From Haliotis rubra (lineage: Eukaryota), in assembly GCF_003918875.1 (NCBI RefSeq), contig NW_025767427.1, forward strand, positions 186,001 through 250,000: a stretch of DNA of 64,000 nt, given 5' to 3'. How positions within the stretch are numbered: position 1 is the first letter of the stretch; each line of letters starts with the position of its first letter. The notes below the pieces were generated by a model. The model saw only the letters and a program-made list of their open reading frames with translations. It made no database searches and was not told where the DNA came from. This document shows positions 12,651 to 57,000 of the stretch, piece by piece. The translations under genes and the position numbers were made by a program.

Positions 12651-13105
12651 GCAGTCTCTAAGGGACAGCCATGTGTTCGAGAACAGATGGAGACGGCACA
12701 GCACAGGTTAATGAATAAATAACTTTGTCTGTGAACGTGCTTCTCGAACACCTGGCTGTCCCTTTCTCTGCACTCCTCCCTCGTAACAAACAGTGAACTG
12801 TGTCAATATTTTAATGATAGTTTGTTAAACAACTTTATTATTTTTATGACAAAAAATCTGCAAAAACCTCACAGAGTGGGTATGATGTTTTGATCATGAT
12901 CAGCGTTTCATTGAGTATGTTATGTTTATTAGTTTTCGAGTTAGATTGCAATTCATCGGTCCGCTTTTGAGCCAAACGGACTATAGGAGAGGGTCATTAT
13001 TGTCAGTACACTTCTGCATCAAAATCCTCCCTCCCTTACTCCTTAAGAAATGACTGGTCCCTAAGTCATGGCAGTGACTGTCCACTATTTCCAAACAGTT
13101 CTTAC

Positions 13106-14245: not shown

Positions 14246-15067
14246 CTGAAAACAGGCATAATGGCTTACAGTCAGTCTTCATTATGAGGGAATACGACTG
14301 CAGTTATTTGTCATTTGACAATAGTGAAAGTTTGTTTTGTTTATTGTTCTACACCACACTCGAGATATATGACAGTCTGTAAACAATTGTGTCTGGATCA
14401 GACAATCCAGAGACTGACATCAAGAGCATCGATCTCTTCAATTTGGATATGATGACATGCATCGCCTGACCACCTAATCTCATCAGTTGCCACTTACGAC
14501 AGGCAGCTTGCTGATCAATTGTAACCAAGATCTACATAGGACTAATTGTTATAATAGCTGTCTGCTATTTGATGTGGTGGGTTGCAAAGAAATAGTAGAG
14601 AAAAATATAGCAATGTTGCATGGGTCTGAGGTCCATGGTTTAATAATACCTATTTTTCAAATCTTGCCATATTCACTAAGAACAAGTTATAACTTCTTTT
14701 CATCCATCATATTTATACATATTTAGTTGCTTTGCTTGTTCTCAGTTTATTTTTCAATGCTCATTATGTGTGCATGAGTGTGAGGGTATGTGTGTATGTA
14801 TGCATGTGTGTACGTATCACAAAGGGGCATCAAATATTGTGGTACATTTAGGTTATACGATTTTTTCCAATTATTTTATTTTTTAACCGGTTCAGTGAAG
14901 AGTGAGGTTAAGCCAGTTTATATAATTATGTTGTAAAGGAATAGAACTTTTATCCTGTTTTCATGAAATTTACCTTTTCATGGTCCATTTCAGAACACAA
15001 ACTGTGGTTTCAATCATCATGATTGGATGAACGAATTACTAAAGAATGATTCTATTGAAGTTTTTAC

Positions 15068-15962
15068 CTTGATAGTAAACTTTCCAGTAGAGATTGAAGC
15101 ATCACACAGTTTGTGCTCAGTCATCAAGTGGAACAGCAACAGCCGCGTCTGATCGCCCCACTCCTGGTCATACAGCTCCACCTCCTCTGCAGGATTGATT
15201 CTCACTGGTCGCTGTGTTGTCTTCGCCTTCTCAGCTATCTTCTTGGCAGGAACGTTGACAACCATCTTCATCTGGGTGTCCTCCACACAGGTGGGCGGGG
15301 ACATCATGACTGTGTTGGCCATGTTGTGGGAGCTGTACTGAGTCTGCTGGTGCTTCAGCATCACCCGGCCATACTCCGTCATTTCTGTTTTGGATGGCAG
15401 GGGAACATCTTTAGCAGTGTCTTGACTCATTAAGTGAGTGTTACTTTCGAAAAGCGGTAAGCTGTCACTGATACTTTTTTGGAAGATGTCTATAAGCAGT
15501 CTCTGCTTGATGTTGATGAAGAGTTTGTTGTGGAAGAGACTTAGCCATCTCCTCATCTAGAACGACAGTGTGTACAATCTCCAAACCTTTACTTCTAAGC
15601 AGCTCATAGTTCCTTCTGTCAGTGTCAATGGATCGAGAAAAGCCTCCAGGGTCTTCACAGCTCTTATCCAGACCGGAATCAACGGAATATGTAAATTTAT
15701 CTGTTCCAGGATCTGTCTGAACAAGAGCAGACTGTAGGTATGCTTGCTGGACAATATCAGTGACCTGAGCTTCGTACACTGCTTGTGATCCTGTGTTGGT
15801 AACGAACCCTCCATACTGCCCATCTTCCGCGGCATGGGCTTGAGACCAAGCAACCAGCTGGGAGGGATGGGTCATCCCGATGTCGGGGATGGTACTCTGA
15901 AGGTCGGCGGATGACACATCGTTCACCCCGTGGTCCTGACCGTCACCTGGGTAGTCATCCAT
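15068..15962 (-). CDS. ZBTB-like copy A, first coding exon (MDDYPG.. to BTB start ..LCDASISTGKFTIK); +1 frameshift in the T-run at 15475-15480
   Basis: Acceptor TGTTGCAG| (exon starts 15986), ATG 15962, donor AAG|GTAAAA, phase 0. Confidence 0.85.
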
Positions 15963-16849
15963 TCCTACCAGTCTTGTACTGACACCCTGCAACATAAAAC
16001 AGCCCATGGAAACCACAGAAATAGAGTGAGTGAGTGAGTGAGTGGGTTGATGCCAGTGATTGAGTGAGTATTGAGCAAGAAGTGAAGAGGAGTGACCAGA
16101 GTGAGGAGTGAAACATTGAAGTGGTTTTACCACATTTAGCAATATTCCAGCAAGAACAAAGAGGTGACACCAGAATTTGGCTTCAAACCATTGACTGACT
16201 GACTGAGTTTAGTTTACAGCTTTTAGCAATATTCAAGCTACATCAAGCGGGGACAAAAAATGGGCTTATCAAATTGTACCCAGGGATTTGTTCTTCCTGA
16301 AGATGCCATATCTTTAACCACTGGGCTAAGATAACTTGCTCAAAACATTGAAACCATGTTGGGAATTGAATACGGGTCTTCAGCGTGATAGGCGATCGCT
16401 TTAACCACACTAGTCTTTGATTGGTGTATAAACATGTAATTGTCAGCCAAATAGTAGTAAAAGGCAAGTACTTTTATTTATGCTGCATCTTTTCCATCCT
16501 GTGCTTGGACCAACCTCAGCATCATGCATAACAATGAATTGAAAATTGCCTACTGGGAATCAAGAACAGTTCAGACTACCAATGACATTGACAAGCAAGT
16601 AAACTCAAACTTTAAACTCAAATTTTATCCTCAGCAGATTTCAATCACAGATTTTCATTATAGACTTTTTTTTCAAACTTACATTATACTATAACAATAG
16701 TGTTTCATAACAATAGTGTTTCGGAGTTGCTTAACATTGGTTACCATGGTTACAACAAAACCCATAAAGAATCTCTTATAAATCTCAATGTTTCCATTCA
16801 GTGTTAACCTTTTACACTGACATTCTACTCATGCCTTTCCAGTATTAAA

Positions 16850-19729: not shown

Positions 19730-19891
19730 NNNNNNNNNNNNNNNNNNNNNNNNNNNNNNNNNNNNNNNNNNNNNNNNNNNNNNNNNNNNNNNNNNNNNNN
19801 NNNNNNNNNNNNNNNNNNNNNNNNNNNNNNNNNNNNNNNNNNNNNNNNNNNNNNNNNNNNNNNNNNNNNNNNNNNNNNNNNNNNNNNNNNN
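19730..19891. other. Assembly gap
   Basis: Run of N. Confidence 1.
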
Positions 19892-23053: not shown

Positions 23054-23224
23054 GGGGCGGTGGGGTAGCCTAGTGGTTAAAGCATTGGTTCGTCACGCCG
23101 AAGACCCGGGTTCGAATCCCCACACGGGTACTATGTGTGAAGCCCATTTCTGGTGTCCCCCGCCGTGATGTTGCTGGAATATTGCTTAAAGCGGCGTAAA
23201 ACCAAACTCAGTCAGTCAGTCAGT
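23054..23224 (+). mobile_element. tRNA-derived SINE, family 1
   Basis: Near-consensus copy; TSD tcttacgacaac. Confidence 0.9.
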
Positions 23225-29685: not shown

Positions 29686-31289
29686 CTAGTTATAACCATG
29701 GGGATAAAACTGCTGCTGTTGCTGATAATATCGCCTGAATCATAGCTGCATCATATGGCTGCTGGTTATTGCCTACTGAAGTCACCGTCTCATATGTCTG
29801 GGTGGGGTCTGGGGTCGTGACTTGAGGAACAGATGCTGGGGTCAATGTCGTTACTACTTGTGCCGCCTGGAGGTTGAGAGGCGACACAGCCTGCTGCAAG
29901 CTGGTGACAACCGGGTAAGGGGTGTGGGGGGAGTCAGAGGGAGGAGGAGGGCTGATGGGAGAATGCTGCATGTAGAAATGACTGGCATTGGTGGCCATGG
30001 TGTGCTGTCTCTGAGGGCTGAGTGTGGGACTGGATGAGGGAGGCTGGTCAGGGACTTGGGCCTCAGTGGTAATGGTAGTGAGAGGGATGGTGGACTCCAC
30101 CGTATAGGTTGTGATGCTTTGAGATGTTGTGGAGTCTGTCGTAGACAGAGGCAGCAGGATGGCATGCATGGCATGTTCTGCTGCAATGACATTGACTGCT
30201 CTGTCCAGAGCTGCAGTGGCTGTCAGAGTCAATGGAACTTCAGCCGTGGGCAAGGTGGCGTCGGTCACAGTTAGCGAAGTGTCTGCTATCCCAGAAGTGT
30301 CTGATGCTGGATGTGTCATACCAGACTGATCCAGACTACCAGTTTCAAGATACATCTTAGGGGCATCAAACCCAGGTTCTAGAGTCTTCAACTGGGACAT
30401 AAGAGCCTTGATACGTTCAGGGTCATACTTATGTTTGTTACAAAGATGCAGCCTCATGTTTCCTCGTGTGGTACTCTTGTACGGACAGTCAGGGCAGCTG
30501 AATGGCTTCTCTCCTGTGTGAGTCCTCATATGAACAAGTCGCTGTGTTTTTGTCTTGAAAGTTTTGTTGCACTCAGAACATGAATGTTTTCTTTCATCAC
30601 TGTGTCTGTGGAAAACATGGCTGTTGAGACAGGTCCTGCTTTTGAATCCCTGCCCACAAACTTCACACACAAACGGAGTCTCTTCCTGGTGGATAAGCTT
30701 ATGGTCCTTCAACTGAAACTTGGTGAAGCACTCCTTGCCACAGATGTCACAAGTAAACGGTTTCCATCCTTGTGGAAGTGGCACGCCATGTCGGAAATAC
30801 TTGTGGTAATGGATGTAGTAGAAGTTGGGATCTTTAGTCTTGTAGCCACAGATATCACAAACTTTTGGACTTGCTTCCCTTCTCCTTATCACAACATTCT
30901 TAATCACCTCATCAGCTGTAACTTCGTGGGTGTTCACAAGATGAGTCACACTCCGTTTTGGAAACACAAACTCATTGCCACAAAGCTCACACTTGTACTG
31001 TCGTTCACCTTCCTCAATGTGTTCTGCCATTCTCTCAAGTTCACTAGCAAGCTGGCTAGTGATGTCTGCTTTGGGCCATCTTTTCCTCTTCTTGGGCCTA
31101 GGCTTTGTGATCCTTGGTGCTGCTGGCTTCTCAAGCTCTTTGGCTGGACTCGGGCTCGGGCTGAGGAAGATCATTGGCAGATCATAATCATCATCCTTGT
31201 CATTCTCTCTCGTCAATCGATTCAACTCCATCTTTGCTCTCTTCTTTGGAGGAGGTCTCACAGCCACGTGGGTAGGAAGAGGCAATTTT
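29686..31289 (-). CDS. ZBTB-like copy B, last exon: six C2H2 fingers; +1 indel at ~29732 near the end
   Basis: Near-identical to 9093-10668, with an 8-aa in-frame insertion; same acceptor. Confidence 0.9.
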
Positions 31290-31489
31290 CTGTAAATACA
31301 AACAGGTAATGATCAATTTTCAGCAATGTTACTTCTTCAAGGTCATCGTAGTCATCTACTGAGCACCTTCATCAACCCCACCTGTATACACATGACATTG
31401 TTGAGAGGTGTATCTAATATTAGTCAGCCCATGAGAACATGCCATGAATGACTCCAAGCCAAATAAGTCCTACCCAATGTATGAACTTT

Positions 31490-31660
31490 GGGGGCGGTGG
31501 GGTAGCCTAGTGGTTAAAGCGTTTGCTCGTCACGCCGAAACCCCGGGTTCGAATCCCCACATGGGTACAATGTGTGAAGCCCATTTCTCGTGTCCCCCGC
31601 CATGATGTTGCTGGAATATTGCTTAAAGCGGCATAAAACCAAACTCAGTCAGTCAGTCAG
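31490..31660 (+). mobile_element. tRNA-derived SINE, family 1
   Basis: Near-consensus; empty site in copy A at ~10870. Confidence 0.9.
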
Positions 31661-32397
31661 TATATACTTTGTACAAATTTTAGTCTTAAGTAATACTGAA
31701 GCATGATATGAGTGGAGCATATACCACTTGGTTTGGGGACATGTACAAATGAAAGAACGATTTCTGTTTATGAAAGGTAAACTGTGTTCTCATCGCTTTC
31801 ATAACTCCCTTTATTCAGACTCACGGGAACCAGATCCTGGTTCACTGGATTAGCAACTGCACCACAAACTGACTGAGTGATGTGACAATGACTGTTTCAC
31901 ATAACTCAACTCATGAGGCTGCACATGAAATATACCATAACAGTCCACTGAAGCGAGGTAAATTACTCATCAAACAGCAGTACAGAAATTGAATCCTCCA
32001 CAGTCCTCTTTCTGAAAGATTTATTGCAAAAGTTGAGTAACTACACCAGTTGATTATTACATAAACACACTAATTCAGTTAATCCTGTTACAATGGGGTA
32101 CAATGGCGGGGATTGCTGCTTTTGGATCAAACACTGTTTGCTGCAGTCAGTTATTCACAGGCAACTGGCTTGGGCATAAAAAAAATAATTCATTTGGCCT
32201 AATTAATCAATGGAGGACTGACAGCAGGACAGGCTCTAATGAAGGGTCATAAAAAAAGAATAACATATTTGGTGACATTTTACGATAAAACATTAAGTGC
32301 TTTGGGGAATCGGTCATGAAAAGAATGAACAAGAAGACTAGTGTTTTAACATGGCAAAGTCCCCCTGCTAAAGAAGAATGAAATGTAACATATATAC

Positions 32398-32798
32398 TAG
32401 GGGTGTCACGATACACCAATCTCACGATACGATACGTATCACGATTTTAAGGTCCGCGATCACGATCGTGTATCGCGATACATAATTTTCGCGCCTTTTC
32501 ATAGCATTACCTTGCCGGCAACGTCGGGCTCGCTGATTGGTCCATCAAAATAGTCTAGCCAATCACAAAAGCTGTTAGTTTCCAACCTATTTTTTAAGTA
32601 AAGCTAGCTACATCTATTTATCGGAGCGGTCTCGTATAATTTTACTATCAAGACTTTGAAGGAGATGGATATAGCATAAAAATTTGAATCGATAAAGTTT
32701 TAAAATAGGAATCGATACACGTAAGCATGTATCGCGTATCGTATCGTCAGTAAAAATGTATCGATGCATCGATACATTCGCGTATCGCGACACCCCTA
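32398..32798. mobile_element. hAT-type MITE
   Basis: TIR TAGGGGTGTC(A/G)CGATAC, 8-bp TSD atatatac, subterminal CGATAC repeats. Confidence 0.9.
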
Positions 32799-33420
32799 AT
32801 ATATACTAGTATTTATCTTTTGGTCACACATAAAATTACCTGTGCTGTAGTTATTGCATTAACAAGATTTTGAAAGTGTCATGTGACCTTGAAAATAAGG
32901 TTAAGGTCACCTTGAAATGACTGGTGTATGCCTCATCCCCCAATTACTTCGACATAATTGAAGACATTGGGTGCAAAGTTTTATGAGATATCGAGTTTGA
33001 AAAGTGGTCAAAGTGTTGTAGAGACCTTGAAGATAAGGTCAAGGCCACCCAAATCGACCCGTGTCTGTGTAATCCCCCCCAATGTGGGCTGTCACCAAAT
33101 TTAAAGACATTGGGTTCAACAGTTAATGAGATATCGCATTAACAAGAATCGGGACGTATGTATTAGGGCTTCAACGAGTCCATTTTCTTGGACTCGAGTA
33201 CTCGAGGGGTGAGACTCGACTCGGACCCGAGTACTCGAAATTCATACCTTTCAAGCAAACAATAGCGTAACTTGCATGACATGTGTTCTGATCACACAAG
33301 TGACTACTTACTTCATTCCGACTTCATATCGTTATGTGACTAACATTTCCCACTGGTCAGAATCAGTATTTGGATGTTTACTTGACACTTGTTTTTTTCA
33401 TCGTACTTCTTGTACTGCCA

Positions 33421-33583
33421 GGGGCGGTGGAGTAGCCTAATGGTTAAAGCGTCCGCTCGACACGCTGAAGACCCGGGTTCGATTCCCCACATGGGTGCAA
33501 TGTGTGAAGCCCATTTCTGGTGTCCCCAGCCGTGATATTGCTGGAATATTGCTAAAAAGCGTAAAACCAAACTCACTCACTCA
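33421..33583 (+). mobile_element. tRNA-derived SINE, family 1
   Basis: TSD cttgtactgcc. Confidence 0.9.
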
Positions 33584-33779
33584 CGCTTGTACTGCCTGCA
33601 AAAGCGCAGTGATATACCGCACAGGCAGCATTTGGTTATTTTTCTCTTTTCTCTATCCAGATCAAGATACGCCCACACATTTGATTTTTTATCTTTCGCC
33701 ATGTCTATCAATTGTCAAGATAGTTACCTTATCATTTTAAGAAGTGAAATTTCAAACGATGTATAATATTTACTCTCAT

Positions 33780-34440
33780 CTGCAGAGAATTGTAACAACT
33801 AATACCATACAGCCACACCTTATGAGGAGTAAACTATTTAATATAGGTCTTAATAAAAACATTATCAGATGGGTACATAGAACTCAGTATGTCAGTGTAA
33901 AGGCTATCAATCTTCTTTTCTCTCAACCTCTACTGCAGAACCAAATGGCTGTGTTCCTTCATCCGTACTCTTCGTTTTGTATACCAATGACTGTTACTTG
34001 TCAATATATGACGTGTTTACTGTGAAATTCGCAGAAGACGCCACTGTTACTGGCCTAATTTCCGATTCTGAAGATTATTATTGTCAAGGCATTGACAAAA
34101 CCGTAATGACAGTTTTTTATCAAACCTCTATTCAAAGTGTGTTGACCTACAATTTTCTATGTTGGTATGGGAGTCTGTCTCATTGCAACAAAAACAAGCT
34201 TTTCAAAATTGTTAAAACTGCTTGCAAAATTTCTGGGGTGTCTTTTAAGTATATTCCCTTTATCTATGAGCGCCAGATTGTCACAAAGGCAACAAAAATT
34301 AGATTTGATAGTTGACATATTTGATCTCACCATTTTGAACTACTTCCTTCTGGACGCTGCTGTCAATTACCTTCCCTCAAAACAGAGTTCGACAGTCTTT
34401 CATACCATCAAGTATTAGTGAATGCAACAATATTTTGAAT
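33780..34440 (+). mobile_element. Degenerate Rex1/Babar-like LINE reverse transcriptase fragment
   Basis: NTIQPHL..KL, YTNDC..VKFAEDATVTGLI, FYQ..IQSVLTY...WYG motifs. Confidence 0.75.
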
Positions 34441-35000
34441 CACCATCAAGCGTGATTACAACTAGAATTATTCAGCCTCTTTACCTATGTGGTTAATTGA
34501 ATTATATCATGTCAGTTTTATTGTGTAAATAGCATTCGTTTTCTGCATGTAATTATTGTGTATATTTTTGTGAACTGTGTATATATTCACTTTGAGACAG
34601 TTGGATGTATAAGAATATCCTCCGGGATAATCAAGTTACATCTTATCTTAATATTAGACGTTAACGGCCGCTCATGCTTAGCACATGGCAGACAGTCTGT
34701 CAACGTCAATAATTCGAGTTATCTCCCCTTTTCAAGTCCTCGAGTCCTTGAAAATGGACTCGAGTCCAGCTAAACCCGACTCGTCCTCGAGTACTCGAGT
34801 ACCCGTGGAAGCCCTAGTATGTATGGGCGCTGCTGAATACATAATCCCCCATTCTGTGCTGTAGGGGACAATAACATAGGGAGAGTCAGCCAAAAATATG
34901 ACAAGCATTAGGAGAGGGACATTATTGTCAGTACATCAAAATCCTCCCTCATTCTTAATAAATGACTGGTGATTGTCCACTATTTCCTAGCAGTTCTTAC

Positions 35001-36142
35001 CTTGCCCTTCCTTTCTTGCCTTTCTTCATCCCCGTCAAAGCATCCGATGCATTGTCTGGCTTTCCTGCTACCTCATCCAGGATAGGCTGAGGCACTGTCA
35101 TATTGGCACATGCTTGGATCCCCTCAGTTGTTTCACTGACATTATTCGTAAGTATTTCAGGCATACTTGGTGTGACAATTATTGTCGAATCTCGCATACT
35201 TGTCTCCATAGTAACAGGCACAGTGTTACTGACGTCCTTGTTGACCAGCTCAACCGACTGAAGCAACTTCTGTTTCCTGCCCTGAAGAGTTGGAACAGGA
35301 GTCTCCTCTGCTGCCCCTCTGTCCATGGAGTCCATGTCTAGACCCAAGTTATCACCTGCCTCAGACATCTCCAGCAATATGTCTGAAGCACCCAAAGGTT
35401 GTTTCCACTTTGTAGCAGTGTAACCAGGTTTCACATCATTAAAACTTATAGATTTCTCAACCTTGTGTCCAACTTTGCCTTTTCTGATAGCCTCTTTCTT
35501 GGCAGCGTTTCTTGCCTGAAATCTGCCTTTTGGTCCTGCCTTAACAACCGGTCCAACAACTTCCTCCTCCTCATCGTCATCAGTAGCAGCATCATTATCA
35601 TCATCATCATCATCATCTTCCCACACATCCTCAACAACCTTCGGGGCAGTTGCTCCTCTGGTGCCATATCTATGCCCCACAGTTTTTGAGATGGTTCCTG
35701 TCAGTTTTTTCTTTTGACCACGCTTGGGTGGGACCCTTTTGGGGCTTTGTAAAGGCAATTTAGCAATCTCAGACATTGCCTTGAAGTAACTCTCTTCTGT
35801 CCCCACATTTTGATCCTTCTTAGAATTCTTATTTGCATTTTCAAAGGACACCTTCAGCTTTGGCCAGCTTCCAACATTTGTGGACATATTGTGCTTAATC
35901 ATGATACCATAGCATAGATGTTCCAGATTATGGATTTCAAATATTTTGGATAACACTTTTATCTCCTTGACTAATCCAAGGTTAACTTTGACTATGCCAA
36001 GGTACAGGAATGTCACAAACACTTTCAGGGTAGATTCAGATATGTGCACCGGGACGATGATGCTTGCAAACCTAGAGTCGACACCTTCCGAGAGGAGGCT
36101 GGCAAACCGCTCACTCGACATGGCAAGCACCAGCTTGTGCAG
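35001..36142 (-). CDS. ZBTB-like copy B, coding exon 2 (BTB C-half), intact
   Basis: Single ORF; 1142 bp; phase 0 to phase 2; canonical splice sites. Confidence 0.9.
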
Positions 36143-36763
36143 CTGAAAACAGGCATAATGGCTTACAGTCAGTCTTCATTATGAGGGAATACGACTGCAG
36201 TTATTCGTCATTTGACAATAGTGAAAGTATGTTTTGTTTATTGTTCTACACCACACTCAAGATATATGACAGTCTGTAAACAATTGTGTCTGGACCAGAC
36301 AATCCAGTGATTGATATGCCTCGGCTAAGTTAACAGGCCTGACCACCTGATCTCATCAGTTGCAGGTAGGTTGCTGGTCAATTGTAACCAAGATCTACAC
36401 AAGACTAAACGTTATAATAGCTGTCTGTTATTTCATGTGGCAGGTTGCAAAGATATAGTACAGAAAAATATAGCAATGTTGCATGGGTCAGAGGTCCATG
36501 GTTTAAAATACATATTTTTCAAATGTCATCATATTCACTACTGACATGAGAACAGCAAAGCAGAAAAAAGACGGGGTTTGGGGGGTCTTTTAGGGCAGAT
36601 TTACAATAAAATCAGTGAGCCTGACCACCTGATATTGTTAGTCGCCTCAAGACAAGCATGGGTTATTGCAGATCAATTCTAAGCTGGATCTTCACGGGTG
36701 TGTAGTTCAATCATCATGATTGGATGAAAACATTACTGAAGAGTGATTCTATTGAAGTTTTAC

Positions 36764-37654
36764 CTTGATAGTGAACTTGCCAGTAGAGATTGAAGCATCA
36801 CACAACTTGTGCTCAGTCATCAAGTTGAACAACAACAGCCGCGTCTGATCGCCCCACTCCTGGTCATACAGTTCCACCTCCTCTGCAGGATTGATTCTCA
36901 CTGGTCGCTGTGTTGTCTTCGCCTTCTCAGCTATCTTCTTGGCAGGAGCGTTGACAACCATCTTCATCTGGGTGTCCTCCACACAGGTGAAGCGGGGACA
37001 TCATGACTGTGTTGGCCATGTTGTGGGAGCTGTACTGAGTCTGCTGGTGCTTCAGCATCACCGGCCATACTCCGTCATTTCTGTTTTGGGTGGCAGGGGA
37101 ACATCTTTAGCAGTGTCTTGACTCATTGAGTGAGTGTTACTTTTCGGCGGTAAGCTGTCACTGATACTTTTGGAAGATGTCTATAAGCAGTCTCTGCTTG
37201 ATGTTGATGAAGAGTTTGTTGTGGAAGAGACTTAGCCATCTCCTCATCTAGAGCGACAGTGTGTACAATCTCCAAACCTTTACTTCTAAGCAGCTCATAG
37301 TTCCTTCTGTCAGTGTCAATGGATCGAGAAAAGCCTCCAGGGTCTTCACAGCTCTTATCCAGACCGGATTCAAGCGGAATATGTAAATTTATCTGTTCCA
37401 GGATCTGTCTGAACAAGAGCAGACTGTAGGTATGCTTGCTGGACAATATCAGTGACCTGAGCTTCATACACCGCTTGTGATCCTGTGTTGGTAACGAACC
37501 CTCCATACTGCCCATCTTCTGCGGCATGGGCTTGAGACCAAGCGACCAGCTGGGAGGGATGGGTCATCCCGATGTCGGGGATGGTACTCTGAAGGTCGGC
37601 GGATGACACATCGTTGACCCCGTGGTCCTGACCGTCACCTGGGTAGTCATCCAT
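36764..37654 (-). CDS. ZBTB-like copy B, first coding exon; four single-base indels (sequencing error or pseudogenisation)
   Basis: Aligns to 15068-15962; indels near 37372, 37170, 37060 and 36990; in-frame TGA at 37370 as assembled. Confidence 0.75.
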
Positions 37655-38703
37655 TCCTACCAGTCTTGTACTGACACCCTGCAACATAAAACAGCCCATG
37701 GAAACCAACAGAAACAGAGTGAGTGAGTGACTGACTATTTCTGCAAATGAATGAGTTTGATGCCACTTTTAGCAATATTCCAGCAATATCACAGCGGAGA
37801 CATCAGAAATGGGCCTCACAAGTGGGGAATCAAATTCGGGTCTTCGTCATGATGAGTGAATGCTTTAACCACTAGGCCACCCACTATGTAGTAGAGTTAC
37901 TTTCATTGTACAGTACTGCAAAACATTTTAAATCAAATCAGGAACTAGGTTTTTTATTGCCTGAAGAAGACATGTCAACCAACTTTATAAAATATAACTT
38001 GCTCGAGAAGATACAATTTTCATTCAATAATATTTTGTTAACAGTGTACGGTAGGCCACTTCTCGTACACATTATGTCTTTGATTGGTGTAGAAACAGAA
38101 AGTAATTTATTGCAATTATTAGGCCGGTTACCATGGTTACAACAAAACCCATCAAGAATCTCTTATAAATCATAATGTTTCCATTCTGTGTTAACCCTTA
38201 GACTGTGACACAGTATTAAATAATGAAAACTAATCCCACAATTGCACAGTTGTGAAATTTGTAAAAAGAGCTGACTGTAGTATATGGACATGTATGTTAT
38301 GTACATATATGGGAGACAACTCCTGCAGACTTATTTGACAGTAGCAGCAAGCCGATTAGAGTTGCATCCCTTGGGGACCCCAACATGTAACCTCCACTTC
38401 TGTAGTAAACACTGAAAATACTTCATGTGTTCTGTTCGGCTACGGGCTAAGAAGTGTATAGGATTCAAACACTAACAAAGCAGTTTGTTGGCTAAAAACA
38501 GGCTATATGTATACAGAAACTGATTAATAAAGGAATCCTAATATAGTGAGTACGTTTTCAAACTGTTCTAATCAATATTCCTTCAAGACCAGAACATTTT
38601 ACCATGTGTAGGGAATCAAACCCAGGCCTCCTGCATGTCAAATTAACACTTTAACCACTAAACTACCCACTCCCTCCACACAGAACACAACACAAATGCT
38701 AAT

Positions 38704-45178: not shown

Positions 45179-45388
45179 TTAAGCTTCTTCTCATTCCAGT
45201 TGACAAGCGTGACAGGAGTCGGATATCCAGGTGGATCGCAGAGGGCCGTAACGCCTTTCAGAAAGTCCCCAACAGTGGACCAATTCTCTCGGTTTTGATC
45301 ATAATTTCCTCTTGTCTGGCCTCTAGTTTGATAGAGTAGGTGAACCCATCAAGGTATACTTCAAGGACTTCGTGCTATATAGTACACG

Positions 45389-45540
45389 TGAGTGAGTTTA
45401 GCTTTACGTCGCTTTTTAATAGCAATATTCCAGCAAAATCTTGGCGGGGGACGCCAGAAATAGGCTTCACACCTATGTGGGGAATCGAATTCGGGTCTTC
45501 GGCGTAACGAGCGAACGCTTTTGCCACTATGTAACACCGC
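45389..45540 (-). mobile_element. tRNA-derived SINE, family 1
   Basis: Matches the family 1 pattern. Confidence 0.8.
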
Positions 45541-45731
45541 CGAAGCGTAGCACAAAATGTTTTTGAGAAGTTTAAAGGGAAGCAAAATTCCAAGTTTGAA
45601 AACATCGAAAAATGGATCGGTTACTTCTTCGCGGAATACGAAATTGCTTACTATGGGCTATACTATCGACAGAGAGAAACTGTCTATGGAAAATATCATG
45701 ATTACAACCAAACGAGTAACCTTGTTTGAGG

Positions 45732-47027: not shown

Positions 47028-47527
47028 ATGGTGCACAAAACCTGTGGTTACGGCGATTGTAGAAGCGATAGCCGAAAAGAAAATTTAGACAATGTGACTT
47101 TTATTTCTTTTCCAAGAGACACTGGCATAAACCACGAAAAATGCCTCCGATGGATAAAGTTATCTGGGCGGGTTGATCTGACACCCGAGCGGGTTAACAG
47201 ATACACATATGTCTGCTCTAAACATTTCGTCGGTGGCAATGGTCCAACTGACGAACATCCAGACCCAGTTCAGTTTCCAGGCAAAATATCAAGAATACCC
47301 AGAGGTATCCACGGAAACATGCGGGTAGCACCGCACCAAGTGATTCAAAAGCCAGCCAAGAAGCAAAAGACATTCACGGAAACATCTGCAGCTCAACTAA
47401 AACATGTAGATGTACAGAGTACAAATTACATGTACTTCAGTCAAGTAAAGGAAGAGCCAGGCTACTCAGATTTTACCATGGCACAAGTGGGCGGTGATGC
47501 AGCCAGGAATCAGACTAAGTCAATCAA
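47028..47527 (+). CDS. THAP zinc-finger exon (exon 1 of putative THAP-BTB gene; donor position uncertain)
   Basis: MVHKTC-x4-C..FP..W..VCSKHF..P C2CH signature at the N-terminus; phase-2 donor candidates AA|GTCAGT (47527) or TG|GTGATA (47545); unspliced ORF stops at 47549. Confidence 0.8.
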
Positions 47528-48180
47528 GTCAGTCGTACACCAGTGGTGATAACGTAGGCGGTAAAATGAAGCCATAAAATTATGCCAATAGTGGATGTCC
47601 TGTCCTGGCAACAGTGCAGTTGCATGGATGCAGCCCATACAGTATTTATTACTTTGATCAGGCTGTTTGCTCTCAGTTTCCGTATATCCTGTGCCAATTA
47701 GATCCTTAGGGACCGTTCATAATTCATGGCTAGGGGGTAGTTCATATGAATAAACTCGTATTCCAGCCAAGGCCTACATCAACCTTGGTATAGTGCAAAG
47801 TCGTCTAGGTATATGCTAGACTAGGCTAGGGGGGTGATGATGATTTTTATGGAAAAGCATGTACATGTGAATGACACGCACACAGAGAATAATCTACCCT
47901 TGGTAATTTGGTATTTGTTTGTGAAAGGGCCTGTGATCTGATGATTAAACTCATTGCCTTAGTTCCAACTGGCAACATGAGCTTAAGCCTACACATAGCT
48001 AACTGAAGTCTGAAAATGTGGGTACGGTGCTCTTCTCTCCTTACATGCCTTAGCTTAACCCAATTTTGTTTGGGGAGATGCAAGTTAAGTAGATCCACTC
48101 CAAGAAGCCTTGTTGACTTACAACCTGATTCAATACATCTGTTTTCAGTAAATAGTTCATGTTAACGTTTTAATATTCAG

Positions 48181-48346
48181 GTTCTTGGTGAAAGAATGGG
48201 GGAGTTTTGTGGAGCCTGACTGTGGCCTGACATCTGGGTATGTTGACGACAATCACTCAAATGATGTCATTAAGCAGATGTTCAACATGTGGAAGGAACA
48301 GAAGATGTGTGATGCAGCGTTCATCGTACAGGGAATGAAAGTTCCA
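48181..48346 (+). CDS. BTB domain N-half exon (..HSNDVIKQMFNMWKEQKMCDAAFIVQGMKVP)
   Basis: TTCAG| acceptor, |GTGAGT donor, open frame; not in the ORF track. Confidence 0.85.
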
Positions 48347-48543
48347 GTGAGTAAATAAATCTTGAGTGTGTTTATTATAGAATATAAACAGAATTATATA
48401 CATAAAAGTTGTGCTTTGCTGATTCAGTAATTTCAACATAATATTTGACACAATGTTTGACTGTACATGATACATTTTGTATCCTGATCTTTTTTTTCTA
48501 AGTGTCTTCAGTCTGGAAATTATTTTGTATAAATGTGTTGCAG

Positions 48544-49489
48544 TTTCATCGCCCTTATGATGTCAGCATGCAGCTCCCCATATGAAGACAGTGTTGGACA
48601 GAGAGGACCTGTCATCCAGCTTAGACATCCACATGCCTGACTCAGTCTCCATAGAAGCAATGTACTGCTTCCTGCACTACATCTACACGGCTCCCTCAGC
48701 CTCACCATCAACACTGCACAGGCGGTCCTGAAGATAGCCACTATCCTCCAGGTGATCAAAGTACAGCAACACTGTAAACAGTTCATAGAGAACATTGCAG
48801 GCAAGCTGGGTCTCAACCCAACCCTCACTCAGTCGGTCAGGTTTACTGTGTCAAGGGAAGAAGAAACCGTTACAGGACGATCAGGGGATAGAAGGACCAT
48901 TGTCATTCCTGATCCTAGTGCTTTTGAACCTGATGGAGACCTTCCAAGAACCTTTGGTCCCAAATCTGCAAGAGTCTCTTCAGACACTCAGTGTGATACT
49001 AGAGATAGGCCTTCTAGTTCAAGCAATGTTGGAAGTTCCAGCATGACAGATTGTGTCATGAATACTGCAAAGAGTGACATGAAATCTTATGATACCAGTT
49101 TGTCAACATGTGTGAACGACAAGGCTTCATTTCCTGCTAAGATGATCTCACAGAGGAACTGCAATGGTTCTAACTTTGCCATGTCTAGTGGTTGTCAGTT
49201 CAGTAACCTTGAGCAAACAGTCCCAAACCGTCATTCCTCAGCTGAGTTCTGTCAGCCTGAGAGTAACCATAGCAACACAGGTAGCTCCATCTACAATGGG
49301 CAGTGGTCAAGTAAGGTGACCAATTCTGGGACTCAGGGAAGCTCATGTGTGGAAGATGGGGAAGAAAATATGGTTAGTTCTGATACAGAACCGTTTATAA
49401 AGCAGGAGCCATGTCAAGACAGTGATTTTGAGCCTTATGTATTCTTTGAGGAGCAGCAGCCTTTATCCTTTCAGAACACACAGACTTAG
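48544..49489 (+). CDS. BTB C-half plus S-rich tail, terminal exon; three 1-bp indels in C/G runs
   Basis: Corrected read FHRLMMSACS..MKTVL..FLHYIYTGSLSL..VLKIATILQVIKVQQHCKQFI; IKQEP motif; TAG ending at 49489. Confidence 0.8.
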
Positions 49490-50545
49490 AATTACATGAA
49501 CTGGAAATGATTTGTCTTTGAAATCATGTGCACAAACTCAAAGAATGTTAAAATAAATATTTCTAATTTTCTTGTGGGCATTGTTTTTTATTTCCTATCT
49601 GCAATGTATACTTCAGTGTATATGATATATGAACACAAACAGGTTTTATTTCACTATTTATCTGGTTGCTGTTTTTCCTTTAAGAAAATGCGTTGCTGAT
49701 TTTCGTTTCAAAGTTAACGTTTTTGTAAAAATGTGTTGCCGTCTTCATGTACGGTTTTTCGTGTTATTAAGATTTAAAGTTCCTTGTATAAAAGTCTAAA
49801 GGCACAGATAAAGTTCTTCAAACTTAAAAACCATACTTTGTTTCAGTTTACTTTCACACAAGTCGTCTGCACAAGCAAATGTATCTTTTTCTATTCTGGA
49901 CCTGTCTTCTTTTGTTAACCCAAAGCTTTATTCAAGGGGAGAGAGACATCTTATCTGAGCAAAGGTGTTCGAGACATCAGACTAAAATCTGCAGACATTG
50001 TTTCAGTAGAATTCATTCAAAGGGGTTGGGAAGAGAATGATGATGACAAAGACAGATTTTGCATTTCTCTTCTTTAACGCAGTACTTTGTAAAATAATGG
50101 TAATCTTAAAACAATTGGGTCAAACAAGTTTCCAGTGATTGACAATATGAGCAGGGATCTACGTAATTCAAATAAAATACAAAACACGACTTAGCCTCTA
50201 TTAGAAACCCCTATGGAAACACGAGCAGAGTTATCTCCCCTAAATGTTCTCCGGTTTATCAGAAACATTACCATCGGATAGACATTTCTTGCTTCATATT
50301 TGCCAACATTAACTTTGATTGTATACTTTCTTATGTCTGGTAGCTTACGATCATACATGGCATAATGTTACTTCGACTAATGGGTATACGCATACGTTTT
50401 AACACACTCACTTGTGGTCGTCAATTAAATACTCTGTTGGGATAAACAAGAAGAAGTACTCTTGGGTTACTCAATACGTATTTAGAATAATGGTCCACTT
50501 TAATATATAACAGAAGAGATACTAGGCCACATCCGAAAACTTAAA

Positions 50546-50695
50546 GGGGCGGTGGGGTAACCTTGTGGTTAAAGCGTTCGCTCGTCACGCCAAAGGTCCG
50601 GCTTGATTCCCCACATGGGTACAATGTGTGAAGCCCATCTCTGGTGTCCCCTTTCGTGATATTGCTGGAATATTGCTAAAACAAATTCACTCACT
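50546..50695 (+). mobile_element. tRNA-derived SINE, family 1
   Basis: TSD tccgaaa(a/g)cttaaa. Confidence 0.88.
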
Positions 50696-51540: not shown

Positions 51541-51672
51541 GTTCTTTTCTACATAAAATTACGAACTTTGCACAATGTTTCAAAGTAATAGGGTTACCTT
51601 TCCTTTGTAAATATATTATGGAATTGTAATGTGTAAGATAAATGCACTTTTCCCTAGTGGGACTGATGGCAC

Positions 51673-52936
51673 CAACACTCTTGTGCCAAAAGTTTCGTCA
51701 CTGCCGAGCTGACAACGTCATTTTGCAGAACGGGTCGCGCTTCATTAACTGCGATTAAACAAGAACATGTGTTTGTCTTACCTTGATATTTGGTGGAATG
51801 ACCCTTCATTTTCACCACTGCTTGCACACGATCCGATATTGACATATAAAGCGTCTGAATGTATTCTGCGGTCAGGTTGACCCTGGTCGTGTCAAACAAG
51901 TCCTCTTTTGTCCTGATGTCCACTGTGTTGGTTTTGATCGCTCTTTTCACATTCAACCAGATATTTTCAATGATATTTATATCCGGTGACTGTGCAGGCC
52001 AAGTCAGGCACTTAATATTGTTCTTTTCTGTTCTTTTGTATGTGCCAACGATACGGGCCCGAAGAACGGGAGCATTGTTATCCCGGAAAAGGTAATTTTC
52101 GTCGGGGAAGTGCCTTGCTAATACTGGCCACAAGTTATCATGCAGTATATCAACATACTTCTGAGCGTTTATGTTTCCTTCAATGGGCACTAAAGTTCCT
52201 ACACCATAACATGCTGTCGTAACGGACACACACATTGCGGGCGGTTGACTTCGTCGGCCTTTCTCCAGATATACACACGGTTACTTTTGCCAATAACCTT
52301 TTGACTTTCACCCGAAAATATTATAACATTCCAGTTACCTTCCACAGTCCATGCCTTTCGTTCCTTACACCAAGCCACTCGTTTAGATACGATTTATTTC
52401 TCACAACCATCTTCATTTTAACAATTCGCCTGTGATTGTGAACCTTCATTGTGTTCTCTGTACTGCAGTACATTCCTCCTAGACACAGGGTGATTCATAT
52501 TATCATTAATTTTGGTGGTTTTGTCCGTCAAAGTTGACTTGCGATTATTTTTCACCATTCGAAAAACCGAGGTCTTGTCCCAGTTTGATAACGATGAATG
52601 TTTCGAGGCCGATTTTCCACACTTCCAGTCACACGAAGTTCTTCAACAACGCTGTGAACACTAGTCACGAGATTTTTGTCCTTCCTGATTTAATCTGACT
52701 ATTAATTGTTTGGTGTCAGTGTCGAGTTCTTATTTTTGCGAGCCATCTCGTCAACAGTAAAAACACCGGAAATAAGAGAGCAGACGACAGGTTTAGCTTA
52801 TCACGTGATAGTCACGTGTATAAACAACAGATGTTTGTGTCGAATGCAGCGCACAATGACAACGCTAAACTGTCTTAATTTTCAAAGAGCGCAACACAGA
52901 TTGCAAAATGACGAATATTTTTAGCACGAGTCTGTA
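51673..52936 (-). mobile_element. Degenerate Tc1-like transposon
   Basis: G.GTLV.IEGNINAQKY..FRDNNAP..WPAQSPDINIIENIW; imperfect TIRs. Confidence 0.88.
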
Positions 52937-53039
52937 GTTATAACAGTAAACGATGCAATTTCCGACATGGTGCATAAACAATATGGTTTGGAACGGTTTA
53001 AATAGTCCGGGCGTTCACAAGTGCTTTTGCCAGCTGTAA

Positions 53040-53190
53040 CACTATTTTCCATTGGCTAAATCTCGCCATGTCAGCCAATCGCTATTTCAATAGCAAATGG
53101 TACGATGGATTCAATTATGTTTACATCATGGCCGCCGTGATTTCTTCCATGGGCTCGTATGTGGAATGTGTTTTGTGTTTGAGTTGTAAG
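53040..53190 (+). promoter_or_regulatory. Probable promoter and non-coding first exon of the NEK gene
   Basis: Paired ATTGG/CCAAT at 53051-53079; GTAAGT donor at ~53186. Confidence 0.4.
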
Positions 53191-54090
53191 TGTAATTTCG
53201 GGTACAATTTCAAACATATTTTTATTTTTCCTTGTTGAAAAGATGTTTAATAATGATTTAATTGAGCTGTCAGGGCTAAAATTAACCTTGGCTCGAAAAT
53301 AGATCTCAACATTTAGATCAACTCTAATTTCGGAATTGGTCACCCCAGCTCGGAAGGACAATGTGTCATTTAACTCACTGAAGCGTGTACTGCAGTCGTG
53401 GCCTCCGCTAGCAGAACCGATTATTTGATACATTTGCGTTAAACGCTGTCGATGACTTTCCACCTGTCGTTATTAAAAACAAGAAACTGACCAAAATTTG
53501 GAATGTCCTGCAGGAATGTCCTGTGAATTTCAGATGTGAGAAATTATTTGCCAAATGACCCCTATTTAGACTATCCGCCTCCTATACATGTTGGCATTTA
53601 AATGGCGGTGGGTCTTATGCATTAAACATAAAATAGACGCCTCTTACTTTTTACTTTGATATGTGTGTATGGTAATTAATTATGACTCCTTCGAGCAGTT
53701 GCACCCTTTGTTTGACTCCTTGATCATATGATTAGCAAGATAACACCATATGTATCTTTAAGTGTCTGAAGACTTATCATACCAGGATAATTATACAGGT
53801 TAATTGCTGTGTCAGCATCTTGCACAAAATTTATACACTTCTAATTGACAAAATAGAGCTGTCAGAGGTGCACAAAGCCATTGGTTAGGAAGAACTTCAT
53901 GTATGTAAAGTTTCAAATCTTAATCATCAAATAAAAGTCCATGGACACATCAATACAAAAAATATCAATCTCGATTTCAAAGAAGAAGACATGAATGTAT
54001 CGAATTATATCAAATTATCTGGTTTTAATGTGTGTGTTTTCGTCTGTAACAGGTAAACAACATGATGAGATGATATAACAGGTTAACAAA

Positions 54091-57000
54091 ATGGACAAGT
54101 ATGAAACTATCAAGCGTCTTGGCTCAGGGTCATGTGGTGCGGTGTACCTGGTCAGACATAAGGATACAAAAAGGTCAGCAAGTGCAGAATCATAATCATT
54201 CTTACTGATAAAATATTATGTTCATGAATTATCCTAGCTTGGCTGTTATAATTTTCTTTTAAGTGAAGATATTAATGAATTAAATAATTTTTAACAGGCT
54301 ATCTGCCTGATGAACAATTTGAACTAGCCAATAATATTTGATTTGTTTACAAATGTAATTGTGAAGGTTGATGTATGGCAGGTATGGCCCTCAGAAAACA
54401 CATTGTCAGTTATGGTAAATTTTAAATGATTATGAGTGCAGGACAGATAGTTTCACTGTTGTATTATTGAACCAGTTTGAACCAACTGTTCATGTACCTA
54501 TCTACATAATGTTTCTGGGAACAATGTGTGAAGCCCATTTCTTGTGTCCCTCACCATGATATTGCTGGAATATTGTTAAAAGCGGCGTGAAACCCAACTC
54601 ACTCACTCACATACTGTTTTCACTTTCAGGATGTTTGCTTTAAAGAAGATCGACCTGGATGAAAGGAGAAAAGCACGAACAAGAGATGCAGTTATAAAGG
54701 AGGCCAGGTAAACATTTTCTTCTCTTGTCAATAGAGAAAGTATATCTTTTTCTGGAGTATTAGATATTGAAAAGATAAAATAGATATGCAGTGAATAAAA
54801 GTGTGCGGACAAAAAACACTCCTTTTTTAAATCACAGAATTTTGTTTGTGGGGGTGAACAAGGGACAATAAGTTTGCTATTGGCTTGTTTCCCATTTGAC
54901 TAAGATCTAGTCTCTGAAATGAAATGCTTCAGAGAAAAAGAACAGTTGTTAAATTGTCTAGATATAATAAAAGAGTCCATAGACTCTGTTCTCCAAAATC
55001 GGTTGTAATCTAGACTTGTATTGGCTGTTTAGGATATATTTGTTTCAAGGTCTGTATGACAGACTTATTCCTATCAGCATTTTGTATTTATCTTCTTGAT
55101 CAAGCCTTGTTCTTTTCCTTCAGAATTCTGGAGAAACTAAAGCACCCACACATTGTTGCCTTTCAAGAGAGCTTCTGTGATGAAATAGAAGAATGTCTTG
55201 TCATAATACAGGTGAGAGCATAGAGTGACTTAAATGTGTACAATCATAGACTGGAAAATGTTCATGTGTTTATCATGTTTTTGAGGGAGAGTTCATACTG
55301 ATTATGGAATAACCAGATAAATATTGGATAGCTGGTACCATATTTAGTGATAATTTTTTAAAACCGCACAAGACAAAACTTCAACAATATGTTTTGTATG
55401 TGATCCATATTGGTAGGTAAATGGAAAAAATATTTAAATAAGTGCTTAGGATTTTATGATCAAGGAGCAAAGATAAACAATTCCTTGGTGCAGCAAATTT
55501 CAGACAAATGCTATTTCTAGGATGCACTGCTATTTATTACAGTGTTATCTCCCTTGATTAAATATTGTTGTAGTTCTGAATGGCGACACAGCATCTAGAC
55601 TACAACATTATTCACGACAAGGAAGAAAATCCAATCTATGGTGCTAATTTTGTCTTTGAAAAAAAATAATCAAATAACCTGGTTCGAAAACTACCAGTAA
55701 CTTAATGGCAATATATTGCAATGCACAGTGTGATACAAAGGCAGATATTGCAATATATTACTAGCAAAATTCTGCGCGCTGTACACAACCGTAATTGTAA
55801 TAATATAATCATGGATAGTATTTTAAGAAATATGAAAAAACAAATCTTTAACTTAATTAGCAAAGTTTGCCCCTTACTTTGTAGATATGGTTCAGACTTG
55901 TTGTTTGATAGAATGTCAACATCTGTTGTGTTTTCCATTATAATTGTTGTAATTGTTGTTTTCAGGACTATTGTGATGGTGGTACAATTGAGGATAAGAT
56001 CCAAGATGCAACAAAGGTATTTATAGTATTTATGTGTATCGGTTTTGAATTTTAGTGAGTCAGTTGATCAGTTCATAAATTGTTATTGTTGTTAAAGAAA
56101 ACGTTATATATAATATGGGAAAGTGTTACCGGTTAATAAATTGCCGTGACAAAAGGTTTAAGAATCCCCTTTGAACCAAAATATAACACAGACAAGTCTA
56201 AAATATTCAATAATAATATTGAGCAAACAATGAGCAAGCTACAATGAATCACAATACAGATTTCTAGTACAATGCAATTGAGTCACAAATCTAAAGTAAT
56301 GGGTCACATATAAAATATTAACTCACCAGAGTCGTGGTAACCACAGTGAGATCAGATTTTCTAAATGGAGCATGTTTACAAATGAGAGCTGTCAGGCACG
56401 AAGTGTCAGGGTCAGACAATGGCAATGTGACGAAGGACGAAGGCAAACAACGATGGGCAACTCCAGTAATATCGAAAGTTGCGTGTAATTCTGTGTGTTA
56501 GTCCGTGTGTCAGTCCTTGCGTGTCGCTCAACACAACAGCCAGCCTTTATAGATACTGACACAGATTCTCGAACTTTCCAGCAAAGCATGGCTGTATCAT
56601 TAAACACTTAGATCTTTCTCGAAGCGTGTTGAACATACGACCGGGAGTCAAAGCATAAACATCCGGTCAAGGAAGGTAACTCTGGAGCGCTTTCTCAGAA
56701 GGCGTACCGCTAAAATACTATTGCCATTGCACATACATGACACGAAATGTGACCCAAAACCAACACTCAAAACTTTAACATTGTGACTCATAATATCTAT
56801 CACCTTACCGATGTTATTACAAACCCCATAAAAAACACACTCTCGTAACAGAAAGAAATAAAAACTGAAGTTTATGTTACATATGATCAGTACGACATTC
56901 TAAACAGGGGTACATGTGTTGCCCAGTAATCTAGCAGTGTTTGAAATAAGCCAAAAAACCAGCCAGACATCAGGGCTGGTAACTTCAAAATGTTACCAGC

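What the first reader, a model, noticed from the sequence alone, without database searches (positions are those of the whole stretch)
47028..49489. Putative THAP-BTB chimeric transcription factor, possibly from transposase domestication
Seen: a complete N-terminal C2CH THAP finger, followed 0.65 kb later by two spliceable exons that rebuild a full BTB domain. The ORF track misses this because of introns and three 1-bp indels. The BTB exon needs a phase-2 upstream exon, and the THAP ORF offers phase-2 donors at 47527 and 47545. There is no C-terminal zinc-finger array, no DDE domain and no flanking TIR. SUMO-type VKEEP and IKQEP motifs are present. Known: THAP is the DNA-binding domain of P-element and ISL2EU-type transposases; BTB is a dimerisation/corepressor/CUL3 module usually paired with C-terminal C2H2, kelch or BEN domains. 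Inference: the CxxxxCRSDSR..EKCLRWIK..GR..YVCSKHF..PT..PDP pattern recalls ISL2EU-type THAPs, so this may be a transposon DNA-binding exon captured onto a host BTB. I cannot confirm novelty without a search.
Basis: partly seen in the sequence, partly recalled or inferred. Interest (0 to 1): 0.72.

Follow-up and report, generated by a model that had tools for sequence, protein, structure and literature searches.

The report
Abalone THAP-BTB gene, frame-broken in assembly
This is a real three-exon abalone gene joining a THAP DNA-binding zinc finger to a BTB/POZ dimerisation domain; it is already annotated, but unnamed, in two other abalone species, and its three frame breaks here are probably Nanopore assembly errors.

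Summary
Window 47028-49489 (+) carries a three-exon gene: exon 1 (47028-47527) holds a THAP finger, and exons 2 (48181-48346) and 3 (48544-49489) hold a BTB/POZ domain and a long tail.

- **Species:** the genome is Haliotis rubra.
- **Orthologs:** annotated orthologs in H. rufescens (LOC124112163, 522 aa) and H. asinina (524 aa) have the same exons, splice sites and phases. Both score for Pfam THAP and BTB.
- **Selection:** THAP and BTB are under strong purifying selection (dN/dS 0.04-0.19).
- **Frame breaks:** only this assembly has three 1-bp indels in exon 3. At two or all three sites the length of a short C run differs. The assembly comes from about 30x Nanopore reads with one Pilon round, so I rate assembly error at about 0.7 and a real null allele or pseudogene at about 0.25.
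- **THAP origin:** the nearest THAP relatives sit on PIF/Harbinger transposases (HTH_Tnp_4 + DDE_Tnp_4), not on ISL2EU or P elements.
- **Novelty:** a THAP+BTB pairing was already reported for Octopus (PMC10027918), and H. rufescens has a second such gene.

It is an ordinary, uncharacterised lineage-specific transcription factor. An earlier scan note made the same homopolymer-indel point on other DNA of this genome.

The parts
47028..47527 (+). Exon 1: start codon, THAP zinc finger and a disordered linker. It ends in phase 2 (AA of a Lys codon).
   Evidence: Open frame. Pfam THAP 36.4 bits. 82-85% aa identity to P0003 and P0152 over the whole exon. The ortholog exon ends at the same place.
47043..47228 (+). 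THAP domain core (aa 6-67), with C2CH ligands C6, C11, C63 and H66.
   Evidence: 98% aa identity to H. asinina over 93 columns. dN/dS 0.04-0.13.
47445..47459 (+). VKEEP, a psi-K-x-E-P sumoylation-type consensus in the linker.
   Evidence: Kept as VKQEP in H. rufescens and VKEEP in H. asinina. The function is inferred only.
47528..48180 (+). Intron 1 (653 nt), GTCAGT...CAG.
   Evidence: Sequence. The ortholog proteins read ...KSIK|FLVK... across this join.
48181..48346 (+). Exon 2: N-terminal third of the BTB/POZ domain. It enters in phase 2 and leaves in phase 0.
   Evidence: Single copy in the genome. 87-90% nt identity to the orthologs with no indels. dN/dS 0.12-0.32.
48347..48543 (+). Intron 2 (197 nt), GTGAGT...GCAG.
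   Evidence: Sequence. The intron sequence is also seen upstream of the exon in Logan contig L015.
48544..49489 (+). Exon 3: the rest of the BTB/POZ domain, a long low-complexity tail and the TAG stop. As assembled, the frame is broken three times within the first 146 nt.
   Evidence: The 265-aa open part (48692-49486) is single copy and 80% identical to P0001.
48552..48554 (+). Frame break 1: CCC here, against CC in H. asinina and the SRR5986942 species, and a single C in H. rufescens.
48572..48579 (+). Frame break 2: one extra base. AGCTCCCC here against AGTTCCC in all three relatives.
48685..48691 (+). Frame break 3: one base missing after 48688. ACACGG here against ACACCGG or ACACTGG in the relatives.
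49397..49411 (+). IKQEP, a second psi-K-x-E-P motif in a conserved C-terminal patch.
   Evidence: Conserved in P0001, P0003 and P0152.
49552..49557 (+). AATAAA, a likely polyadenylation signal 63 nt after the stop.
   Evidence: Read from the sequence. Inference only.

Best explanation
This is the Haliotis rubra ortholog of H. rufescens LOC124112163. It is a three-exon gene for a protein of about 530 aa.

**Domains.** The protein has an N-terminal C2CH THAP zinc finger, a disordered linker and a ZBTB-like BTB/POZ domain. A long, fast-evolving tail follows and ends in a conserved acidic patch.

**Likely mode of action (inferred from the domain families, not shown).**
- The THAP finger reads a specific DNA site.
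- The POZ-type BTB makes the protein a homodimer, so it binds paired sites, and offers a surface for corepressors or CUL3.
- The two conserved psi-K-x-E-P motifs are sumoylation sites that tune repression.

**The frame breaks.** The three 1-bp frame breaks in exon 3 are most likely residual homopolymer errors of the Nanopore-based assembly, so the animal's gene is probably intact.

**Origin of the THAP finger.** The THAP domain belongs to the sequence group found on PIF/Harbinger transposases of molluscs and other lophotrochozoans. A transposase origin of the DNA-binding exon is therefore plausible but not shown.
For: - **Species:** H. rubra protein XP_046542771.1 matches own-genome locus L002 at 100%. 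The genome's size and contig count equal the published assembly plus 16,907 bases and one contig, the size I would expect of a mitochondrial genome.
- **Orthology:** same three exons, phases and GT-AG sites in H. rufescens (L016) and H. asinina (L018). The downstream flank is collinear up to a kinase gene.
- **Architecture:** both orthologs score for Pfam THAP and BTB.
- **BTB type:** the nearest solved BTBs are ZBTB17/Miz-1, ZBTB7A, BACH1 and BCL6 (E 1e-14 to 1e-5).
- **Selection:** dN/dS is 0.04-0.13 for THAP and 0.08-0.19 for BTB, including pairs with the window once the three indel columns are set aside. The linker and tail give 0.24-0.72.
- **Other indels:** every other indel among the four species is a multiple of 3.
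- **Context of the breaks:** at two or all three sites a short C run differs in length. The assembly used about 30x Nanopore reads, two Racon rounds and one Pilon round (PMC6774278).
- **Window lineage:** there are no stops other than those the frameshifts create. Window-specific changes are 9 synonymous to 8 non-synonymous.
Against: - The frame breaks are therefore unverified.
- Three breaks within 146 nt against none in the other ~1460 coding nt is clustered under any uniform error model (my estimate p about 0.02).
- No H. rubra protein for this locus came back from the protein searches. That would fit a pseudogene call in its annotation, or withheld records.
- No transcript-derived sequence was found in any abalone, so the splice join rests on predicted orthologous models and conserved splice sites.
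- DNA binding, dimerisation and sumoylation are inferred from domain families only.
- The structure prediction failed (mean pLDDT 31).
Confidence: 0.68

Rival explanations
1. The gene is really broken in H. rubra, either as a recent pseudogene or as a null allele captured in the assembled haplotype. As assembled, translation stops 14 codons into exon 3. That would give a protein of about 235 aa with THAP, the linker and one third of a BTB. The stop lies in the last exon, so nonsense-mediated decay is not expected.
For: - The three indels are in the sequence as given, and no frame runs through them.
- No H. rubra full-length protein for this locus was returned.
- The neighbouring duplicated BTB-zinc-finger genes also differ by frame-breaking indels that are not in homopolymers, so real decay does occur in this region.
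Against: - The broken stretch, read in the orthologous frame, still shows dN/dS of 0.09-0.17 against relatives.
- There are no other stops, and no non-3n indels, in about 1460 further coding nt.
- At two or all three breaks a C run differs in length, the typical Nanopore error, in an assembly polished only once with short reads.
- Another scan note on this genome made the same point on other DNA.
Confidence: 0.25
2. Two unrelated things lie side by side: a THAP exon left by a transposon, and a BTB gene whose true first exon lies elsewhere.
For: - The closest THAP paralogs in this genome belong to multi-copy Harbinger-type transposase genes.
- There is no RNA evidence for the join.
Against: - The THAP exon is single copy. 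Its best paralog is only 53% identical.
- It is syntenic and 82-85% identical in aa in three other abalones, and its THAP domain has dN/dS of 0.04-0.13.
- Its phase-2 donor matches the phase of exon 2, and both are conserved.
- Two annotation pipelines join them.
- There is no DDE domain and there are no element ends.
Confidence: 0.04
3. The whole unit is a mobile element, or a recent retrocopy, that carries THAP and BTB.
For: Dispersed-repeat copies in opposite orientation flank the gene.
Against: - All three exons are single copy in 1.38 Gb.
- The introns are kept.
- The same ~170-nt repeat occurs at ten or more other places in the window, and at different places in the H. rufescens locus.
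- The position is syntenic across species.
Confidence: 0.02

Closest known systems
H. rufescens LOC124112163 (P0003, 522 aa) and the H. asinina uncharacterised protein (P0152, 524 aa)
   Same: They are orthologs. They share the same three exons, phases and splice sites, the same THAP + BTB + tail layout, the same psi-K-x-E-P motifs and syntenic flanks.
   Different: They have intact frames, while the window has three 1-bp indels in exon 3. Their introns are longer (1.6 and 1.9 kb in H. rufescens). The tail diverges quickly (60-72% aa identity).
ZBTB/POK and BACH transcription factors (ZBTB17/Miz-1, ZBTB7A/LRF, BCL6, BACH1)
   Same: These are the best sequence matches of the BTB domain among solved structures. 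The logic is also the same: a dimerising POZ domain joined to a sequence-specific DNA-binding domain.
   Different: Here the DNA-binding domain is a single N-terminal THAP finger, upstream of the BTB. In ZBTB and BACH proteins it is a C-terminal C2H2 array or a bZIP. The domain order is reversed.
THAP-bearing PIF/Harbinger transposases of molluscs, brachiopods and others (for example H. rubra XP_046542771.1, Lingula XP_013389213.1 and Mytilus proteins)
   Same: The N-terminal THAP domain is 46-57% identical, the closest THAP relatives outside the orthologs.
   Different: The window gene and its orthologs have no HTH_Tnp_4 and no DDE_Tnp_4, are single copy and have no element ends.
Octopus THAP proteins with BTB/POZ (Mukherjee and Moroz 2023, PMC10027918) and H. 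rufescens LOC124116783 (P0095, THAP+BTB, 975 aa)
   Same: The same THAP-then-BTB pairing in molluscs.
   Different: P0095 is only 46% (THAP) and 23% (BTB) identical, and it falls elsewhere in the THAP tree. It may be an old paralog or a separate fusion. The Octopus sequences were not compared here.
Human THAP proteins (THAP1, THAP11 and others)
   Same: An N-terminal THAP finger followed by an oligomerisation module. The role is transcription regulation (established knowledge).
   Different: The human proteins dimerise through a coiled coil and often carry an HCF-1 binding motif. Here a BTB/POZ domain takes that place.

Membership tests
THAP domain (PF05485) | Profile score above Pfam's gathering cut-off | tested here: met
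   36.4 bits against 23.9, aa 6-67.
THAP domain (PF05485) | C2CH zinc signature C-x2-4-C-x35-53-C-x2-H, with conserved P, W and F | tested here: met
   C6, C11, C63 and H66 (Cx4Cx51Cx2H), with P29, W42 and F67. The signature itself is from established knowledge of the family.
THAP domain (PF05485) | C-terminal AVPTIF-like box | tested here: inconclusive
   The sequence reads HPDPVQFPG at the matching place. The Pfam match stops at profile position 58 of 87.
BTB/POZ domain (PF00651) | Profile score above Pfam's gathering cut-off | tested here: inconclusive
The window pieces alone gave no hit, because each is short and the frame is broken. The orthologs score 66.7 bits over residues 198-301, and the window pieces align to that stretch.
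BTB/POZ domain (PF00651) | Uninterrupted reading frame through the domain | tested here: not met
   There are three 1-bp indels at about 48552, 48574 and 48688 in the assembly. Whether they exist in the animal is untested.
ZBTB / POK transcription factors | BTB/POZ plus a C-terminal C2H2 zinc-finger array | tested here: not met
   No C2H2 hit in the 265-aa tail or in the orthologs. The BTB is ZBTB-like by sequence.
PIF/Harbinger transposase | DDE_Tnp_4 catalytic domain (with HTH_Tnp_4), terminal inverted repeats and multiple copies | tested here: not met
   There is no such domain in the window pieces or the orthologs. The gene is single copy. The flanking inverted repeats are dispersed-repeat copies.
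P-element / THAP9 or ISL2EU transposase-derived gene | Closest THAP relatives lie on P-element or ISL2EU transposases | tested here: not met
   16 of 28 long relatives carry HTH_Tnp_4 and/or DDE_Tnp_4, and none carries a P-element transposase domain.

The most novel reading that the evidence does not exclude
The gene arose in the abalone lineage when a ZBTB-type gene exchanged its DNA-binding part for the THAP exon of a PIF/Harbinger transposase. The neighbouring BTB-C2H2 genes, 9 kb away, are of that type and carry an intron at the same place and phase inside the BTB. If so, this would be a datable case of DNA-binding-domain swapping by transposase exon capture. It would have happened at least twice in abalone, because a second THAP+BTB gene, LOC124116783, has a THAP domain that falls elsewhere in the tree.
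Probability: 0.25. Interest if true: 0.45.

Novelty: new member of a known kind. Interest (0 to 1): 0.27.

Why it matters
The finding adds a well-delimited, selection-constrained example to the little-studied THAP+BTB class of lophotrochozoan transcription factors. It also ties the THAP finger to Harbinger-type transposases rather than to P elements. On the practical side, it flags a locus where the H. rubra reference probably carries three homopolymer errors that hide a conserved gene from annotation. It does not open a new kind of system.

Tried and rejected
- **Pfam on the window's BTB pieces:** no hit, because the pieces are too short.
- All searches were exon by exon or used ortholog proteins.
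- **Word-based protein searches:** searches with the tail, the full ortholog and the BTB region found only abalone relatives. They therefore give no view of how far the family reaches outside Haliotis.
- **Structure prediction:** the prediction for P0152 with a four-row alignment failed (mean pLDDT 31). No fold search was run.
- **THAP tree:** the abalone THAP-BTB clade is starred (100/99), but its place among the Harbinger THAPs is an open polytomy. Donor and direction remain undecided.
- **Branch-specific counts:** the counts for the window lineage are too few for a firm test (9 synonymous, 8 non-synonymous).
- **Neighbouring BTB-zinc-finger copies as an error gauge:** the comparison was uninformative. 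Their frame-breaking indels are not in homopolymers and may be real.
- **Rejected readings:** an ISL2EU/P-element origin, a mobile element, and two unrelated units. The reasons are given under the rival explanations.

Full report
**What is in the sequence**

Window 47028-47546 (+) is an open frame. Its first 67 residues hit Pfam THAP at 36.4 bits, against a cut-off of 23.9. The zinc ligands are C6, C11, C63 and H66, and the usual P, W and F are present.

Downstream, 48181-48346 and 48544-49489 encode the two parts of a BTB/POZ domain and a long serine-rich tail. Each BTB piece alone is too short for Pfam, which gave no hit.

All three exons are single copy in the 1.38-Gb genome. The best THAP paralog is only 53% identical.

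**Which genome**

An H. rubra RefSeq protein (XP_046542771.1) matches another locus of this genome at 100%. The genome has 1,378,282,171 bases in 2855 contigs. The published H. rubra assembly A6 has 1,378,265,264 bases in 2,854 scaffolds (PMC6774278). The difference is 16,907 bases and one contig, which is the size I would expect of a mitochondrial genome. The window is therefore from Haliotis rubra.

That assembly was made from about 30x Nanopore reads with wtdbg and DBG2OLC. It was polished with two Racon rounds and one Pilon round.

**Orthologs and the gene model**

A full scan with the THAP exon found two near relatives.
- P0003 is H. rufescens "uncharacterized protein LOC124112163" (522 aa). 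It scores for both Pfam THAP (35.6 bits) and BTB (66.7 bits, residues 198-301).
- P0002 is the THAP-exon ORF on a Logan contig of run DRR299178 (locus L017).
- P0152, an H. asinina protein of 524 aa with the same two domains, came up in the search with P0003.

A Logan contig from run SRR5986942 carries exon 3 of a further species as one open 317-aa frame.

In the H. rufescens and H. asinina genomes the gene has the same three exons. The donor and acceptor sites sit at the same places and in the same phases.

The ortholog proteins read ...KSIK|FLVK... across the first join. In the window this corresponds to exon 1 ending at 47527 (AA|GTCAGT) and exon 2 starting at 48181.

The downstream flank is collinear with H. 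rufescens as far as the start of a protein kinase gene.

Everything above rests on exon-by-exon comparison and on the orthologs' own proteins.

**Selection**

| Region | dN/dS (Nei-Gojobori, exon-wise alignments) |
|---|---|
| THAP domain | 0.04-0.13 |
| Exon 2 (BTB N-terminal part) | 0.12-0.32 |
| BTB part of exon 3 | 0.08-0.17 |
| Linker and tail | 0.24-0.72 |

The BTB figures include pairs with the window sequence once the three indel columns are set aside. dS reaches 0.45-0.66 between the window and H. rufescens, so the gene has been kept over a deep split within the genus.

The two psi-K-x-E-P motifs are kept in all species seen, while their surroundings change. They are VKEEP at 47445-47459, which reads VKQEP in H. 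rufescens, and IKQEP at 49397-49411.

**The three frame breaks**

In the four-species alignment of exon 3, the window alone has the following differences.

| Site in window | Window | Relatives |
|---|---|---|
| 48552-48554 | CCC (one extra C) | CC in H. asinina and the SRR5986942 species; a single C in H. rufescens |
| about 48574 | AGCTCCCC (one extra base) | AGTTCCC |
| after 48688 | ACACGG (one base missing) | ACACCGG or ACACTGG |

- Every other indel among the species, in all three exons, is a multiple of 3.
- Apart from the stops the frameshifts themselves create, the window has no premature stop. Its lineage-specific changes are 9 synonymous to 8 non-synonymous.
- At two or all three sites a short C run differs in length, the typical residual error of Nanopore assemblies. 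This assembly had a single short-read polish.
- An earlier scan note on another piece of this genome reached the same view for a transposon. I treat that note as a lead only.
- The three breaks are clustered: three in 146 nt and none in about 1460 nt. No H. rubra protein for this locus came back from any search.
I put assembly error at about 0.7 and a real pseudogene or null allele at about 0.25.

**What kind of BTB and what kind of THAP**

Among solved structures, the BTB is closest to the POZ domains of transcription factors. These are ZBTB17/Miz-1, ZBTB7A, BACH1 and BCL6. The KLHL and KBTBD adaptors come next.

I scanned 28 long proteins among the THAP relatives.

| Architecture | Number of proteins |
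|---|---|
| THAP with HTH_Tnp_4 and/or DDE_Tnp_4 (PIF/Harbinger) | 16 |
| THAP only | 8 |
| C2H2 fingers (in one of the two, THAP fell below the Pfam threshold used) | 2 |
| THAP + VWA | 1 |
| THAP + BTB (P0095, H. rufescens LOC124116783) | 1 |

The closest paralogs in the window's own genome are multi-copy THAP-Harbinger transposase genes.

A maximum-likelihood tree of the THAP domains gives a starred abalone THAP-BTB clade on a long branch, inside an unresolved set of Harbinger THAPs. P0095 falls elsewhere. This is consistent with a transposase origin of the THAP exon, but it shows neither the origin nor its direction.

**How it most likely works**

Shown:
- the domain content;
- the exon structure;
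- conservation;
- purifying selection.

Inferred from the families:
- The THAP finger binds a specific DNA site.
- The POZ-type BTB forms a homodimer and recruits corepressors or CUL3.
- The psi-K-x-E-P motifs are sumoylated.
- The conserved acidic C-terminal patch is a partner-binding site.

The structure prediction was too poor to add anything.

**Novelty**

The orthologs are in public protein sets with both domains recorded. H. rufescens has a second THAP+BTB gene. Mukherjee and Moroz (PMC10027918) already reported that Octopus THAP proteins mostly carry BTB/POZ. No functional study of such a protein turned up.

This is a new, uncharacterised member of a known kind. Its main local interest is that the H. 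rubra reference probably hides it behind three assembly errors.

Noticed in passing
window 9093-16142 and 29690-37708, minus strand: A tandem pair of BTB + C2H2 zinc-finger (ZBTB-like) genes, 94-96% identical in nt, separated by a gap of N at 19730-19891. Each copy has frame-breaking indels that the other lacks, and these are not in homopolymers.
   Followed up: partly
window 15000-15080 and 14180-14300, minus strand: The neighbouring ZBTB-like gene has an intron inside its BTB (FTIK|LHKLVLAMSS). It sits at the same position and phase as intron 2 of the THAP-BTB gene (KVP|FHRLMMSACS). The two BTBs are otherwise too diverged to align.
   Followed up: partly
window 51654-52235, minus strand: An ORF remnant of a Tc1/mariner-type transposase (Pfam DDE_3, 35 bits), 2 kb downstream of the gene.
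   Followed up: no
window 45388-45542 and 50545-50685, and at least ten other places (for example 623-796, 10958-11119, 23054-23221, 31491-31658, 33420-33588, 54516-54610): A dispersed repeat of about 170 nt, shared with H. rufescens (L016:940-1110 and 8181-8289). Two copies in opposite orientation bracket the gene and could be mistaken for element ends.
   Followed up: partly
window about 52976-54384, plus strand: This stretch is collinear with the H. rufescens flank, which leads into a protein kinase gene (Pkinase, 462 aa in H. rufescens) starting near 54.1 kb.
   Followed up: no
G000:C546 at 725336-725578, 761841-762083 and 791063-791314: Three clustered exons 61-66% identical to the BTB start of the second abalone THAP+BTB protein (LOC124116783). 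No close H. rubra ortholog of that protein was seen.
   Followed up: no
L002, L003, L004 (G000:C2336, C2248, C547): Multi-copy, intron-bearing THAP + HTH_Tnp_4 + DDE_Tnp_4 (Harbinger-type) transposase genes in H. rubra. The copies are 82-100% identical to XP_046542771.1, which suggests a young family.
   Followed up: partly
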